From IMG/VR virus record IMGVR_UViG_3300035180_001778, positions 186,001 to 250,000 of that record: a stretch of DNA of 64,000 bases; one strand, 5' to 3'. The position numbers were made by a program, and so were the translations under genes. Positions 4,469 through 64,000 of this stretch are shown here, one piece after another. The first letter of the stretch is position 1. Each line of letters begins with the position of its first letter. Below the pieces are notes generated by a model, which worked only from the letters and a program-made list of their open reading frames with translations, ran no database searches and was not told the DNA's origin.

Positions 4469-5350
4469 CTAGAAGCGCTGAACCACGACGCGGGTGAGAG
4501 CCTTCGGGTTGAAGGCGCCGATGCCCACGTTCTCGAAGCACGAGAAGCCGATCGTGCGTGCCTTGGGATCGTCGGCCGAGAGGACCGTCAGCTCCGTGCG
4601 GACCGGGAAGCGACCGAAGTTCTCGGGTTCCGCGCAGATGTAGACGAACCCGACGGGGACGAGCCTCGACGTGATGATCTGCGCGCCCCAGAGGACGGCC
4701 TGGAGGCCGGTCTTGAGGAGGGTGGCCTGGCTCTCGATGTCCAGGATGTCACGGCCGAACTTGCGGATGTCCGCGTAGTCGACCGCGTTCATGTAGATCC
4801 GGGCAACCCGGAGGTCGTGACGCTCGATCTCGGCGAACGCGTCCGCGAGGACGGCCGGAGAGATGGGAGCCACCACCGCGACGTCAGGGTTCGACTGCCC
4901 GGGGAGGGTGTCGAAGCCGGAGACGGCGATCGAGTCGAGAACCGTGAAGACGCGCTCGTCTTCCGCGGCCTGGATCTGGGCCTTCGCGAGGTCCTGCGAA
5001 CGCTCGATGAGGTCGAAGCGACGCTCCTTGATCTGCGTGAGCGGGATCTCGGGGTTCGAGGCGATCTCGAACAGCGGGAAGATGACCCGACGCGGCTTCT
5101 GGATCGCGAGGATGTTCTGACCCTCTTCGCCGACCACGAAGGCCGTGACGTCGGGATCCTTGTCGTAGATGGGCAGCGCTCCATCCGGTAGCTGCTCGAC
5201 GAGGAAGGTCTTGCGACCGACCGCGGTGTAGTCACGACGCAGCCGAAGGGGCTGGATCATCGATGCAGCGAGCTTTGCACGGCCGGCGGCCGTCTTGATG
5301 TACTCGCTGATGATTTGCTGCTTCAGCTCGTTGGAAACCTGGTTGTTCAT
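4469..5350 (-). CDS. Major capsid protein (HK97-fold, jumbo-phage type)
   Basis: GRAKLAASMIQPLRLRRDY...GRKTFLVEQLPDGALPIYDKD pattern; follows protease, scaffold and decoration genes; strong codon bias; GAGGA Shine-Dalgarno. Confidence 0.85.
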   Translation of the reverse strand: MNNQVSNELKQQIISEYIKTAAGRAKLAASMIQPLRLRRDYTAVGRKTFLVEQLPDGALPIYDKDPDVTAFVVGEEGQNILAIQKPRRVIFPLFEIASNPEIPLTQIKERRFDLIERSQDLAKAQIQAAEDERVFTVLDSIAVSGFDTLPGQSNPDVAVVAPISPAVLADAFAEIERHDLRVARIYMNAVDYADIRKFGRDILDIESQATLLKTGLQAVLWGAQIITSRLVPVGFVYICAEPENFGRFPVRTELTVLSADDPKARTIGFSCFENVGIGAFNPKALTRVVVQRF

Positions 5351-56775: not shown

Positions 56776-56860
56776 TGGCGGAAGAAGGAGGATTCGAACC
56801 CCGAGGTTTTTAGGCCCCAACTGTTTAGCAAACAGCCCCCAGCCCTGCTGGTCATCTTCC
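56776..56860 (-). tRNA. tRNA-Ser(GCU), 8/4 fold
   Basis: Acceptor GGAAGAUG/CUUCUUCC, 4-bp T-stem, long variable region, G73, CCA encoded. Confidence 0.85.
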
Positions 56861-56934
56861 AAGTCCCATCCCGCAGACCGTACCAAGGGCCCGCTTGCTT
56901 TTTGGTGGAAAGCCAGGCCGATGGGGAGCCTGAG

Positions 56935-57321: not shown

Positions 57322-57407
57322 TGGCGGAAGGCGGAGGAGTCGAACCCCAACGTGTCTAGCGCTCCCTGGCGTTCAAAACCAGTTTGCCTCCAATGGCGGC
57401 GCCTTCC
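57322..57407 (-). tRNA. tRNA-Ser(UGA), 8/4 fold
   Basis: Acceptor GGAAGGCG/CGCCUUCC, T-stem GGGG/CCUC, G73, CCA encoded. Confidence 0.85.
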
Positions 57408-58044: not shown

Positions 58045-58224
58045 AGCGCTCCCCTTTGGGAGGGAGCTTGGACTCGGCGTTTGGGGGTCGTGGCGAGGTG
58101 AAGCGCGAGATCCCCATCCTATGGTCGGGCGGAGAATCCTGTTCGAGGCCTTCCGCGCGACACCGACCGGGGTTCCTGGTTGAGGACTCCCGGCTGTCCA
58201 AGCTCCCTTCCAGAAGGGAGCGCT
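58045..58224 (-). ncRNA. Structured ncRNA A: 180-nt rod with 29-nt closing stem (6S-like shape)
   Basis: 58045-58073 pairs with 58196-58224 (26/29 Watson-Crick); nested inner helices; own promoter. Confidence 0.6.
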
Positions 58225-58260: not shown

Positions 58261-58264
58261 CCCG

Positions 58265-58545
58265 TTCGTTCGTATTCTGAGAAGAGTCCCCGAACAACCC
58301 CTTGGGACCAGCCTCAAGGCTGTTCGGGACACCGGGATCTCACCCCCAATGCTCTCTTGCCACGTTTTTCCGTCAGAACACCTGGTCGCGTCCTTGCGGC
58401 ACTCTTCGGAAGTCAGCTCGGTTTACGCCGAGCTGCTCCTCTCCGTGGGGACTGCCTTGTATGGCTCCCATCCCCATTCGAGAGCATTTCATGCTGACCG
58501 TGGGGTTTCCACAGTCGAGAGGACTCTTCTCAGAATACGAACGAA
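58265..58545 (-). ncRNA. Structured ncRNA B: multi-hairpin domain closed by a perfect 25-bp stem
   Basis: 58265-58289 is the exact reverse complement of 58521-58545; several hairpins with GNRA-like loops inside. Confidence 0.6.
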
Positions 58546-58547
58546 AC

Positions 58548-58626
58548 AACCAAGGGCGGATTCGAACCGCCTACCAATGGCGACCCTTTTGGAGAGTGCC
58601 CACCGCACCATGCGATGTCCTTGGTT
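58548..58626 (-). ncRNA. Atypical tRNA-like RNA, identity unclear
   Basis: Acceptor AACCAAG/CUUGGUU, perfect T-arm GGCGG-UUCGAAU-CCGCC, long D-stem, irregular anticodon arm. Confidence 0.55.
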
Positions 58627-58632
58627 AAAAAA

Positions 58633-58695
58633 CTGGGCGTCCTATCACTTAGACGACTCTCGTGAGAGAGGAAGGTGTCGAACCTTCATACCCAA
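58633..58695 (-). ncRNA. Circularly permuted tRNA-like module (T-arm, capped acceptor, D-arm)
   Basis: UUGGG-UAU-GAAGG UUCGACA CCUUC-CUCUC UCAC GAGAG-UC-GUCU AAGUGAUA GGAC-G-CCCAG. Confidence 0.6.
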
Positions 58696-58829
58696 CGGGG
58701 TGCCCGATACCAACGGACAGATGGGACTCGAACCCACCTCGACCCCTACTCTAAGAAGTCCGAACACGTTGGAAATTCACAGGTCTGCTTTCCACCGCAG
58801 AGCAAGCTTTAATCGTGTTCAGTCTTCGG

Positions 58830-58914
58830 TCGCAAGCCAGGGAGTCGAACCCCGCTTCACATCGATCACCTTGGAAGGCTGGCCGCCCGGCCACTTTTCG
58901 TCGATGCCCTGCGA
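58830..58914 (-). ncRNA. tRNA-like RNA with acceptor-like stem, T-arm and branched arm, lacking a D-arm
   Basis: UCGCAGG/CUUGCGA closing stem and CGGGG-UUCGACU-CCCUG arm; begins right after a promoter motif. Confidence 0.5.
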
Positions 58915-58921
58915 TGAGGGT

Positions 58922-58949
58922 CCTACAACGGGAGGACCTGCCCGATCAA
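58922..58949 (-). promoter_or_regulatory. Phage promoter TTGATC-N16-TGTAGG
   Basis: Exact motif and spacing. Confidence 0.7.
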
Positions 58950-58961
58950 CCTCAAAGACTT

Positions 58962-59348
58962 CTGAATAGTCGATCTGTGTGGCCGCTCAGGTGCAATCAC
59001 GGTAGTCATGTACCGGAGGATTGCCGATCCCGCCGCCTGGGTCTTCGGTCCGGGGGTGCCAGTTCGCCCTCTACGCTGGCACCCTTGTCCTTCCACACAG
59101 AATCAGAAACCTCAAGTCAGACCTACGTGGTCTTGACGTTGGCCGTTCCGGTGAGTCATGTCACCGAGGCTGCTCCCGCGTTGGCGTTGGGGTCTTGGGT
59201 CAGTGTTGGCGTCGAGTATCTTACCCACCTTGGAGGCATGGGTACCTTCTGAGCGCGCTTCTGACTTGTCCCTGCCACGCAGGCCTGACTTGAGGCGTCG
59301 TACTATTCAGTTGTCAATGACCGAGTCGGCTTTCGTTCTCCGTCTCGT
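58962..59348 (-). ncRNA. Structured ncRNA C (about 390 nt)
   Basis: 21-bp helix 59110-59130/59275-59295 with two G-U pairs on the minus strand; closing helix 58962-58970/59302-59310; twin CAUGAC-loop hairpins. Confidence 0.6.
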
Positions 59349-59354
59349 AGTAGT

Positions 59355-59382
59355 TCTACAGTCTGAGTCGTTCCCTGATCAA
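59355..59382 (-). promoter_or_regulatory. Phage promoter TTGATC-N16-TGTAGA (ncRNA C)
   Basis: Exact motif and spacing. Confidence 0.7.
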
Positions 59383-59402
59383 CCTCGGGGTGTTTTTTCT
59401 TG

Positions 59403-59551
59403 AGGTTCGGGTTGAGCAGAGCACAACCTTCGTGCTGACTCGAACAGCCACACCCAACCTTGGGATACCGGACTCGAACCGGAATACAGAGGCTTATGCT
59501 GCCCCTGTGAGATACCCTTCTCTCCAGTTGTGCTCTGCTCAACCCGAACCT
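59403..59551 (-). ncRNA. Structured ncRNA D: perfect 25-bp stem enclosing tRNA-like arms
   Basis: 59403-59427 is the exact reverse complement of 59527-59551; two UUCGAGU T-loops inside. Confidence 0.6.
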
Positions 59552-59553
59552 AG

Positions 59554-59638
59554 CGGAAGATAGAGGCGTCGAACCCCGGCAGATAAATCCGCCACACCGT
59601 TTTCCAAACGGGCCTCGCTCCGAGCGAGAATATCTTCC
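59554..59638 (-). tRNA. tRNA-Ser(GGA), 8/4 fold
   Basis: Acceptor GGAAGAUA/UAUCUUCC, 6-bp D-stem, long variable arm. Confidence 0.8.
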
Positions 59639-59834: not shown

Positions 59835-60186
59835 ATCTTGAGGGGGAAGCGACTCTGGCCTTACCCGCGGCCCCCAAGGGGGCGGGCCAGAGTCTTTTCA
59901 CCAAGGCCGGCGACCCTGGACTTCACGGCCCCGCTGCCTTTGGCAGATTCGGGGTAGTCTTACTCGCCTTCATCAGGGGAGCCCGTTTGAGTTTTCCTGT
60001 GGAGGGGTAACTCAGAAACCCAGGGATGTTTTGGACGGCCTTATCCCACCGAGCCGCCAAGCCTCGCATTGTAGCCCGGTATCACCCGGGGGCTTGGTCT
60101 ACGCGGTCTTTGTCCCGCATGGTCATCTGCATGTTTTCACTGTATCTCCTTCCGTCTCCTTTTCGTTTCAGCGTCTCGATGTAACC

Positions 60187-62081: not shown

Positions 62082-62168
62082 CGGAAGAAGGAGGAGTCGA
62101 ACCCCGGGCAGGTTTCCCCACCCACTTCGCTTTCCAAGCGAGCCCCGCTCCGAGCAGGAACATCTTCC
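62082..62168 (-). tRNA. tRNA-Ser(GGA), 8/4 fold (second copy)
   Basis: Acceptor GGAAGAUG/CUUCUUCC, T-stem GGGG/CCUC, long variable arm. Confidence 0.8.
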
Positions 62169-62964: not shown

Positions 62965-63525
62965 TCAGCCCGAGGCCTGGTTCTGCTGGAACCCCACGAG
63001 GAAGGGTTCCCAGAGGTCCGACTTGACGTCATGCCGGATCTGGGGAGCCCCCAACGGCAGAGTCTTCGGAGCGTGCGGATGCGCGATGCCCTTCCACGTT
63101 GCCGGGGGCTTGAGCCTCATGCCCGCTTCTGCCGGCGTGCGACCAGCCTTGCGGCCGTTGCACGGGTAGCAGCTCGTCACGATGTTCTCCCACACCGTCT
63201 TCCCACCCTGGCGCCTCGGAACCACATGGTCGTAGTTCAGGTCCTTCCGCGACTTGGTGGTGCCGCAGTAGCAGCACATGAAGTTGTCGCGAGCGAAGAC
63301 GTTCTCCCGTGAGAACTTGACGCCCCGCTTGCGATACGGGACGACCTTCTTGAGCATGGCGACCGCGGGCATCTTGACGACCTGCCCATCACGCTCGCAG
63401 AGGACCTCGTCGTACTCTTCCAGGATTTGGATTTTGCCGTTGCAGAAGTCGACCATTGCGACCTGCCACGGCACGACTCTGTGTGGGGCCATCCACGAGT
63501 TCAAGATCAGCGTATGCGAGTTCAT
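62965..63525 (-). CDS. HNH endonuclease (McrA-like)
   Basis: Start MNSH at 63525; FSRENVFARDNFMCCYCG, DHVVP and WENIVTSCYPCN motifs. Confidence 0.88.
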   Translation of the reverse strand: MNSHTLILNSWMAPHRVVPWQVAMVDFCNGKIQILEEYDEVLCERDGQVVKMPAVAMLKKVVPYRKRGVKFSRENVFARDNFMCCYCGTTKSRKDLNYDHVVPRRQGGKTVWENIVTSCYPCNGRKAGRTPAEAGMRLKPPATWKGIAHPHAPKTLPLGAPQIRHDVKSDLWEPFLVGFQQNQASG

Positions 63526-63577
63526 GGGACACCTTCGTGATGCGCCCCAACTTGGAGCGGCTACCGTTTCAATTGCA

Positions 63578-63654
63578 TGGTGCCCGCCGGGGGATTCGAA
63601 CCCCCAACCTTCCGTTTTTGAGGCGGACGCCGCTGCCAGTTGGGCTAGACGGGC
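63578..63654 (-). tRNA. tRNA-Leu(CAA) with short variable loop
   Basis: Acceptor GCCCGUC/GGCGGGC, A73, CCA, loop CUCAAAA, 5-nt variable region. Confidence 0.75.
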
Positions 63655-63708
63655 ATAATACAGGAAGGCCCTGGTTGCGATCAACCAAGGCCTTCCAATT
63701 CGAGAATT

Positions 63709-64000
63709 TGGAGCTGCCGGGAATCGAACCCGGGTCCGCAAAGCTTCCGTTCCGCTTTCGTTTACGTGCGTAGCCGCCATATCCCTGGCGGCTGGGTTCG
63801 CGGATTTGGCCGCGAACTATCTCGTCTGCTTGTCTCGAAGGGGTAGCCGCCGAGCACGCTTCCCCTTCCAGCCCTGTGGGTTGACACCGGAAATCCAGCT
63901 ACTAGGACGATCTTGCTGGCCGATGGTCACTACGCAGCCATCTGCATGGGGACGAGAGCGTTGTCGTTCGCAGGTATACGTCTCGATTGATTACGGCGGG
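63709..64000 (-). ncRNA. ssrA: tmRNA (5' end outside the window); tag ANDNALVPMQMAA
   Basis: 3' end GCGGACCCGGGUUCGAUUCCCGGCAGCUCCA; tag ORF 63971-63930 ends in AA followed by stop. Confidence 0.9.

What the first reader, a model, noticed from the sequence alone, without database searches (positions are those of the whole stretch)
58962..59348. ncRNA C: twin CAUGAC-loop hairpins and repeated GCCAAC motifs
Seen: hairpins CGGUGA-CAUGAC-UCACCG (59149-59166) and CGGUA-CAUGAC-UACCG (59000-59015) have identical loops on slightly different stems. GCCAAC occurs three times and CAAGACC twice in an A/C-rich segment inside a 21-bp helix whose two mismatches are G-U only on the minus strand. Inference: a multivalent protein sponge, or an RNA using kissing loops (CAUG is self-complementary).
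Basis: partly seen in the sequence, partly recalled or inferred. Interest (0 to 1): 0.65.

Follow-up and report, generated by a model that had tools for sequence, protein, structure and literature searches.

The report
Phage RNA with twin conserved hairpins
A giant environmental phage carries, among its tRNA genes, a separately promoted, non-coding RNA of about 390 bases made of two copies of a folded module whose hairpin loop (A-CAUGAC-U) is identical in a distant relative while its stem changes by compensating mutations, so it is a real but very rare new RNA family whose function is still unknown.

Summary
The window is part of a 350-kb uncultured jumbo phage. The element lies in a minus-strand island of tRNAs and structured RNAs.

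- **Own promoter.** It has a copy of the phage's promoter, GGTTGATC-N16-TGTAGN. There are about 94 copies genome-wide against about 1 in shuffles, and 78% sit just before a leaderless ATG. This copy predicts a start at 59348.
- **Fold.** A terminal helix encloses two homologous modules. Each is a long stem, a three-way junction, a variable arm, a conserved C/A-rich linker and a hairpin with the loop A-CAUGAC-U.
- **Homolog.** A covariance model of module 2 finds module 1. It also finds a single-module homolog in a second phage (GroEL 75% identical), at the same position and with its own promoter.
- **Covariation.** Across the three copies, 13 of 13 tested pairs stay paired and 7 show compensatory double changes. 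The loop and junction strands do not change.
- **Gain and loss.** The nearest relative of each carrier lacks the unit exactly between two promoter copies, so it behaves as a gained or lost cassette.
- **Databases.** There is no Rfam match and no other homolog in four sequence collections.
- **Not tested.** No RNA run holds the stretch, so expression is untested. The mechanism (partner decoy or scaffold versus CAUG kissing-loop self-association) is inferred.
- **Sponge motifs.** The repeated GCCAAC copies are not conserved.

The parts
59355..59384 (-). Promoter of the RNA: GGTTGATC (59384-59377), 16-nt spacer, TGTAGA (59360-59355)
   Evidence: Same motif at about 94 sites in the genome against 0-2 in shuffles. 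73 of them have an ATG 4-10 nt after the hexamer.
59348..59348 (-). Predicted transcription start (an A, seven bases after the last base of TGTAGA, as at the leaderless ATGs)
   Evidence: Inferred from the promoter consensus, where +1 is the A of ATG at position 13 counted from the T of TGTA. Not measured.
59316..59347 (-). 5' leader with a small hairpin. It loosely resembles the start of the downstream tRNA-like gene.
   Evidence: Fold. Alignment score z about 3.4 against shuffles, partly driven by the promoter repeat.
59302..59315 (-). Terminal helix, 5' strand (GAC..CUGAAUAGU)
   Evidence: Pairs with 58970-58957 in the minimum-energy and centroid folds. Inverted repeat I16.
58957..58970 (-). 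Terminal helix, 3' strand (ACUAUUCAG..GUC). Probable 3' end region of the RNA.
   Evidence: The next promoter starts at 58951.
59109..59296 (-). Module 1 (D1): a 22-bp stem (59296-75 with 59130-09) topped by a three-way junction
   Evidence: Fold. Found by the module-2 model at 18.4 bits and by the three-copy model at 120.7 bits.
59265..59272 (-). D1 junction strand GGGACAAG (GGACAAG conserved)
   Evidence: Kept in all three copies.
59191..59201 (-). D1 linker motif GACCCAAGACC (GACCNAAGAC conserved)
   Evidence: Kept in all three copies. The variant in run X6 has A to U at 59196.
59148..59167 (-). D1 hairpin UCGGUGA-CAUGAC-UCACCGG (loop 59160-59155)
   Evidence: The stem covaries and the loop does not change.
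58971..59105 (-). Module 2 (D2): a 12-bp stem (59105-59093 with 58982-58971) topped by a three-way junction
   Evidence: Fold. Source of model R1.
59083..59089 (-). D2 junction strand GGACAAG
59040..59050 (-). D2 linker motif GACCGAAGACC
58993..59024 (-). D2 arm 2: GCAAUC/GAUUGC helix, internal loop, then hairpin CGGUA-CAUGAC-UACCG (loop 59010-59005)
58922..58951 (-). Next promoter copy (GGTTGATC..TGTAGG), which drives the downstream tRNA-like gene. It marks the 3' limit of the cassette.
   Evidence: In L006 this is the only promoter copy and the RNA is absent.

Best explanation
It is an independently transcribed, stable, structured non-coding RNA of about 390 nt (59348 to about 58957, minus strand). 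It is carried as a self-contained cassette (promoter plus RNA) in the tRNA and RNA-repair island of an uncultured jumbo phage.

The working unit is one module of 140-190 nt: a long stem, a three-way junction with conserved junction strands (GGACAAG, GACCNAAGAC, CGGCC), a variable arm, and a short hairpin with the unchanging loop A-CAUGAC-U. This phage carries two such modules fused in tandem inside one terminal helix. A relative carries one.

Most likely mechanism (inferred, not shown): each module is a recognition surface for one copy of a partner acting in trans. I think a host or phage RNA-binding or RNA-processing protein is the most likely partner, so the tandem form would be a bivalent decoy or scaffold during infection. 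Paired 5' and 3' ends would protect the RNA from exonucleases.

Shown here: strand, promoter, module homology, covariation, loop invariance, presence or absence as a cassette, and no coding signal.

Inferred: that it is expressed, where it ends, and what it binds.
For: - Promoter: 94 copies of TTGATC-N15-17-TGTA against about 1 in shuffles. One copy lies just upstream, with no ATG after it, as at four neighbouring RNA genes.
- Fold: z = -3.8 against shuffles. 7 G-U pairs among 127 pairs on the minus strand.
- Module homology and a homolog in L012 at the same locus with its own promoter.
- Covariation: 39 of 39 cells paired and 7 of 13 pairs with compensatory double changes, against 28-38% paired when the partner columns are slid.
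- A 96%-identical fragment from a wood-decay metagenome has 4 of 5 listed changes at unpaired positions (35% of positions there are unpaired) and the fifth at a loop-closing pair.
- The cassette is present or absent exactly between two promoter copies in two pairs of related phages.
- Overlapping ORFs match no Pfam or PHROG family above threshold.
- The same sequence is in four sequencing runs, at least two of them not marked as the source, so it is not an assembly artefact.
Against: - No transcript evidence: none of the listed runs is RNA.
- Only three module copies from two phages, plus one short variant. The covariation alignment was fitted to the model, which favours pairing.
- No candidate partner protein is identified.
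- There is no recognisable terminator, so the 3' end is a guess.
- The closest relatives do without the RNA, so it is dispensable.
- The plus strand folds almost as well (z = -3.7), so the strand call rests on the promoter and the G-U pairs.
Confidence: 0.72

Rival explanations
1. Self-associating RNA. The CAUG core of the loop is a palindrome, so two loops can kiss through 4 base pairs. Single-module RNAs would form homodimers or larger assemblies. The two-module RNA of this phage would be the fused form, with kissing inside one molecule or chains between molecules. The RNA-only assembly would itself be the functional object, as in ROOL and GOLLD.
For: - The loop is identical in three copies on three different stems. 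A palindromic contact must change two bases at once, which would explain why it does not change.
- One module in L012 against two fused modules here resembles a homodimer turned into a tandem fusion.
- Phage RNAs near tRNA islands (ROOL, GOLLD) do form homo-oligomers through kissing loops (PMC12286853). RNAs under 200 nt can also form large assemblies (bioRxiv 10.64898/2026.07.01.735769).
Against: - Four base pairs (two G-C, two A-U) is a weak contact.
- An unchanging loop is explained just as well by a protein or another RNA partner.
- No covariation can be seen in a contact that never varies.
- No experiment, and no RNA 3D tool was available here.
Confidence: 0.2
2. Multivalent sponge for a protein that binds short C/A-rich motifs (GCCAAC, CAAGACC), in the manner of CsrB or RsmZ.
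For: The motifs are present and lie mostly in predicted single strands. One C/A-rich motif, GACCNAAGAC, is conserved in every module.
Against: - The extra GCCAAC copies are confined to module 1. Two of them are one local tandem duplication, and they are absent from module 2 and from L012.
- The second CAAGACC aligns with GCGGCC in module 2.
- An environmental variant changes the conserved CAAGACC to CUAGACC.
- That leaves only one or two sites per RNA, against many in known sponges. The only RsmZ-like hit in the area is elsewhere, at E = 7.8.
Confidence: 0.07
3. RNA-RNA decoy or guide. The loop presents AUGA, a start codon plus a purine, to the anticodon loop of tRNA-Met or initiator tRNA (UCAU). 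Alternatively, the junction strands (A/G)GGAC(C) and the loop CAUGA imitate the -10 and start region of the phage's own promoters (TGTAGGA..CATGA), titrating RNA polymerase the way 6S RNA does.
For: The RNA lies in a tRNA island. The phage's mRNAs are mostly leaderless and begin C|ATGA (33 of 90 promoters). AGGAC(C) occurs both in the junction strands and in the promoter's -10 region.
Against: The resemblances are 4-7 nt long and were noticed after the fact. There is no Rfam 6S or T-box signal. No complementary GUCAUG target lies in neighbouring RNAs of either phage. The shape is not the 6S rod with a central bubble.
Confidence: 0.06
4. Not a functional RNA of its own: a decaying duplicate of neighbouring tRNA-like genes, a mobile intron remnant, or a chance fold in a spacer.
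For: The closest relative lacks it. The 5' leader loosely resembles the start of the downstream tRNA-like gene. The family is tiny.
Against: Compensatory changes and unchanged loops between phages whose GroEL is only 75% identical. Its own promoter is kept in both phages. The presence or absence boundaries are promoter copies, not exon junctions. No intron or tRNA model matches.
Confidence: 0.05

Closest known systems
ROOL and GOLLD RNAs (large ornate phage and prophage RNAs)
   Same: Encoded by phages, often beside tRNA islands. Highly structured, with no known protein partner and unknown function. Conserved kissing loops hold their multimers together (PMC12286853).
   Different: No match to any Rfam model, these two included, even at E up to 10. 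This RNA is 390 nt (185 nt in the relative) against about 580-800 nt or more. The architecture differs: repeated three-way-junction modules. Multimerisation is not shown here.
Phage T4 species 1 and species 2 stable RNAs (rnaC, rnaD) in the T4 tRNA cluster
   Same: Small stable RNAs of unknown function encoded among phage tRNA genes (from my own knowledge, not tested here).
   Different: No sequence or structure comparison was possible with these tools. The T4 RNAs are about 120-140 nt and are processed from the tRNA precursor, whereas this RNA has its own promoter.
Bacterial Y RNAs (YrlA) with Ro/Rsr
   Same: Modular RNAs with a long terminal stem, found near tRNA-like elements and RNA-repair genes, some of them in phages (my own knowledge). 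Neighbouring units in this island do have long stems around tRNA-like cores.
   Different: No Y RNA or YrlA match was listed. No TROVE/Ro gene in the 350-kb record, while the same search found the family in two control genomes. The VWA proteins of relatives have the domain at the N-terminus and no TROVE domain. The module here has no T-arm.
CsrB/RsmZ-type protein sponges
   Same: A non-coding RNA with repeated short motifs, proposed to titrate a protein.
   Different: The defining many GGA motifs in hairpin loops are absent. The repeated motifs here are not conserved. No Rfam match in the element.
Phage 'morons' (independent promoter-gene cassettes inserted between phage genes)
   Same: A self-contained transcription unit, present or absent between close relatives at the same site.
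   Different: The cargo is a structured RNA, not a protein gene. No terminator is recognisable. The cassette is bounded by two copies of the phage's own promoter.

Membership tests
Any Rfam 15 family (including GOLLD, ROOL, 6S, Y RNA/YrlA, RNase P, group I intron, hammerhead, T-box, CsrB/RsmZ) | Score against the family covariance model | tested here: not met
   No match in 58900-59420 on either strand at E up to 10 with permissive filters. None for the L012 homolog at 4768-4950 either.
tRNA / tRNA-like | Cloverleaf with T-arm and acceptor stem | tested here: not met
   ARAGORN and the Rfam tRNA models find nothing in the element. The hairpins have a 6-nt loop, not a 7-nt anticodon loop, and there is no T-loop motif.
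Y RNA with Ro/Rsr | A Ro (TROVE) protein partner encoded nearby or in the genome | tested here: not met
   PF05731 has no match in the 350-kb record. The same search found it in the control genomes Deinococcus radiodurans and Bacteroides thetaiotaomicron. The record is only about 73% complete, and a host Ro cannot be excluded.
CsrB/RsmZ-type sponge | Many GGA motifs displayed in hairpin loops | tested here: not met
   GGA occurs in junction strands only. The loops are CAUGAC, CCA and AGAGG.
Group I / mobile intron | Insertion that interrupts a host gene, with exon junctions restoring the uninterrupted sequence | tested here: not met
   Compared with L006 and L007, the extra DNA is one whole promoter-plus-RNA unit lying between two promoter copies, not an interruption of a gene.
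ROOL/GOLLD-like self-assembling phage RNA (works like, not member) | Homo-oligomerisation through conserved intermolecular kissing loops | not testable with these tools
   Only the precondition is met: an unchanging loop with the palindrome CAUG. Native gels or cryo-EM are needed.
New family proposed here (CAUGAC-loop three-way-junction module) | Closing stem, GGACAAG, variable arm, GACCNAAGAC linker, hairpin with A-CAUGAC-U, CGGCC, closing stem | tested here: met
   All three copies (window D1, window D2, L012) have every element in the same order. Stems covary.
Phage promoter-driven transcription unit | GGTTGATC-N16-TGTAGN upstream on the same strand | tested here: met
   59384-59355 matches exactly. 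The motif is about 90-fold over chance in the genome. L012 has GGTTGATC-N16-TGTACA before its copy.

The most novel reading that the evidence does not exclude
The module is a small self-assembling RNA. Palindromic CAUG loops join modules into dimers or larger RNA-only assemblies, and this phage has fused two modules into one transcript. That would make it a compact relative, in principle only, of the ROOL and GOLLD nanocages found beside phage tRNA islands. It would be a natural case in which a homodimeric RNA and its tandem-fused form can be compared directly.
Probability: 0.18. Interest if true: 0.72.

Novelty: new variant of a known kind. Interest (0 to 1): 0.5.

Why it matters
Phage tRNA islands keep turning up structured RNAs of unknown function, such as GOLLD, ROOL and the T4 stable RNAs. 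This one is a clean, small and tractable example:
- it has a defined promoter;
- its module is 140-190 nt;
- one 8-nt loop does not change;
- natural one-module and two-module forms exist;
- close relatives that lack it can serve as natural controls.

If the loop mediates RNA-RNA assembly, it would extend RNA quaternary structure to a much smaller phage RNA. If it binds a host factor, it would be a new RNA-based tool in the contest between phage and host over tRNA and RNA repair. The rarity of the family and the lack of a cultured host limit its immediate impact.

Tried and rejected
**Looking for more homologs**
- Four pattern scans of IMG/VR contigs built on the element's own motifs. Only the same phage (a 100%-identical second assembly) or chance hits turned up. 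The chance hits were AT-rich coding DNA or were rejected by the covariance model.
- A pattern scan of JGI metagenome contigs found nothing.
- A pattern scan of 185,579 species genomes gave one Methanosarcina hit whose helices do not form.
- Anchoring on the conserved neighbouring tRNA-like gene brought three more contigs, none with the RNA.
- Protein-guided fetching through GroEL brought loci L006-L009, L012-L015 and L020-L022. Only L012 carries the RNA.
- A search with a neighbouring L012 protein found just one relative.
- BLAST against GenBank phages found nothing. The closest isolated phage GroEL is about 45% identical.
- Whole records of the relatives could not be searched.

**Expression**
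- No RNA run holds the stretch.

**Ideas dropped**
- Y RNA with Ro.
- Transposon with target-site duplication: the flanking 'direct repeats' are promoter copies.
- Group I intron, tRNA, RNase P, 6S and ribozymes.
- A small protein.
- Loop pairing with a GUCAUG site in neighbouring RNAs.
- A second paralog elsewhere in the genome.

Full report
**Where it is.** The window is bases 186001-250000 of a 350,469-bp IMG/VR virus record, estimated 73% complete. It is an uncultured jumbo phage of about 59% G+C. The finding lies in a minus-strand island that holds tRNAs, tRNA-like RNAs and a tmRNA, from 56.6 to 64 kb. RNA-metabolism genes surround it: an R2K ATP-grasp protein, an Rv2179c-like 3'-5' exoribonuclease, an AlkB-like 2OG oxygenase, an HNH nuclease and a GroEL. 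Relatives add RtcB, an RNA ligase and a tRNA-binding protein.

The helix's non-Watson-Crick positions are G-U on the minus strand. The whole genome has about 1370 hairpins, both strands, with a Watson-Crick stem of at least 5 bp and a 6-nt loop. Only these two, 150 nt apart, have the loop CATGAC.

**Strand and transcription.** The sequence I first took for direct repeats flanking the element, GAGGTTGATC(A/G)GG, is the phage's promoter.
- TTGATC-N15-17-TGTA occurs 94 times in the genome, against 0-2 in shuffles. Its consensus is GGTTGATC-N16-TGTAGGA-N4-CATGA.
- At 73 sites an ATG follows 4-10 nt after the hexamer, so most of this phage's mRNAs are probably leaderless.
- Twenty-one sites have no such ATG. 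Five of these lie in this island: before tRNA-Leu (63684), before three other non-coding units (60214, 58949, 58260) and before this element (59382).
- By the consensus spacing, the transcript starts at the A at 59348 on the minus strand.
- This start is inferred. No public RNA run holds the sequence.

**Anatomy.** The minus strand folds with z = -3.8 against shuffles.
- A terminal helix (59315-59302 with 58970-58957) encloses two domains.
- D1 (59296-59109) is a 22-bp stem topped by a three-way junction.
- D2 (59105-58971) is a 12-bp stem topped by a three-way junction.
- Both run in the same order: closing stem, GGACAAG, a variable hairpin arm, a C/A-rich linker with GACCNAAGACC, a hairpin with the loop CAUGAC closed by A-U, CGGCC (AGACC in D1), closing stem.
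- No terminator is evident. The next promoter begins at 58951.
- ORFs overlapping the region match no Pfam or PHROG family above threshold.

**Homologs.** A covariance model built from D2 alone finds D1 at 18.4 bits. It also finds one region in another phage contig, L012 4798-4937, at 21 bits and E = 0.003.
- L012's GroEL is 75% identical to this phage's.
- In L012 the RNA has a single module and its own promoter (GGTTGATC at 4732, TGTACA at 4756), with a predicted start near 4768.
- It has a terminal helix (CAGAUUGA with UCAAUCUG) and sits directly upstream of the same conserved tRNA-like gene as in the window.
- On the three-copy alignment, the 8-bp closing stem and the 5-bp loop hairpin are paired in 39 of 39 cells. 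Seven of 13 pairs show changes on both sides. Sliding the partner columns gives 28-38% pairing.
- The alignment was fitted to the model and has only three rows, so this is good but not overwhelming support.
- The eight bases A-CAUGAC-U, GGACAAG, GACCNAAGAC and CGGCC do not change.
- The hairpins of D1 and L012 are both 7 bp, so D2 looks like the derived duplicate.

**Independent variant.** Four sequencing runs hold the identical sequence. Two may be the source sample and two are not marked as such. Their contigs cover the whole stretch in overlapping pieces, so the tandem form is not an assembly artefact. A wood-decay metagenome has a 162-nt contig over 59149-59310 at 96% identity. Four of its five listed changes fall on positions that are unpaired in the fold, where only 35% of positions are unpaired (about P = 0.05). 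The fifth is a loop-closing pair. One change turns the conserved CAAGACC into CUAGACC.

**A cassette that comes and goes.** The closest relative, L006 (GroEL 92% identical, same gene order), lacks the unit precisely. Window 59551-59403 matches L006 6956-7103 and window 58955-58002 matches L006 7110-8002, with a single promoter copy at the joint. L007 is close to L012 (neighbouring protein 83% identical). It likewise has one promoter and goes straight into the tRNA-like gene, where L012 has promoter, RNA, promoter. L009 also lacks it. The unit is therefore gained or lost between promoter copies, most simply by recombination between them, and it is dispensable.

**Rarity.** The following searches found no further homolog:
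- the three-copy model, over all fetched loci;
- the single-module model, over the rest of the genome;
- motif patterns, over IMG/VR, JGI metagenome contigs and 185,579 species genomes;
- Rfam, which has no match even at E up to 10.

**What it does.** This part is inference. An unchanging loop on covarying stems, together with long conserved junction strands, points to a specific recognition surface in each module.
- I rank a protein or other trans partner (a bivalent decoy or scaffold in the RNA-repair island) slightly ahead of RNA-only self-association through the CAUG palindrome.
- Self-association remains attractive. One phage has one module and the other has two fused modules. Phage RNAs beside tRNA islands (ROOL, GOLLD) are known to multimerise through kissing loops (PMC12286853).
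- Ideas based on resemblance to the promoter and start region, or on pairing with the tRNA-Met anticodon, rest on 4-7-nt similarities. No complementary target lies nearby.

**Verdict.** This is a real, new and very small family of phage structured RNA. Mechanism and expression are untested.

Noticed in passing
whole genome; e.g. window 53789, 53528, 58262, 58951, 59384, 60216, 63686 (minus strand): The phage's promoter motif is GGTTGATC-N16-TGTAGGA-N4-CATGA. There are about 94 copies against about 1 in shuffles. About 78% place an ATG at the predicted start, so most mRNAs of this phage are probably leaderless.
   Followed up: yes
window 58828-58915 (minus); L006 7150-7237, L007 4539-4627, L009 5484-5571, L012 4993-5082: A tRNA-like gene with its own promoter, conserved in all five related phages. 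It has a 7-bp acceptor stem, a stacked 7-bp stem holding two hairpins, and a canonical T-arm. There is no conserved anticodon loop. Four pairs carry compensatory changes. No tRNA model detects it.
   Followed up: partly
window 59403-59551 (minus); L006 6956-7103: A perfect 25-bp stem encloses a tRNA-like core with a T-arm. In L006 roughly ten stem positions differ (by eye) and all are compensated, so a perfect 24-bp stem is kept. It could be an RNase III processing stem or a Y-RNA-like design. No Ro gene was found.
   Followed up: partly
window 58265-58545 and 58045-58224 (minus): Two more long stems. One is 25 bp and perfect, around 231 nt, where L006 has a 71-aa ORF. The other is 29 bp and 90% complementary, around 122 nt, with its own promoter at 58262.
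   Followed up: no
window 59840-60180 (minus): Another promoter-driven unit of about 340 nt with no convincing ORF lies upstream of the tRNA at 59834-59764. It is 78% conserved in L006. Its 5' end (AUCGAGACGC..GAAACGAAAAGG) resembles the 5' leader of the RNA studied here.
   Followed up: no
window 56779-56861, 57326-57407, 58547-58627, 59555-59638, 62083-62168 (minus): Several tRNAs with long variable arms score best against the Rfam selenocysteine-tRNA model, but below its threshold. ARAGORN calls three of them Ser, Trp(cca) and Ser. At least three further T-arm motifs in the island (near 58680, 58730, 59665) belong to RNAs that no tRNA tool recognises.
   Followed up: no
window 63708-64000 (minus) and 62965-63780 (minus): A phage-encoded tmRNA runs off the window end. 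An HNH endonuclease ORF overlaps its 3' part by about 70 nt.
   Followed up: no
L013 6110-7231, L014 6594-7715: More distant relatives carry an IS605 OrfB/TnpB-like gene and an N6/N4 methyltransferase at the place where this phage has its RNA island.
   Followed up: no
L020 15544-19941: In one relative the ribonucleotide reductase gene carries an intein with a LAGLIDADG endonuclease.
   Followed up: no
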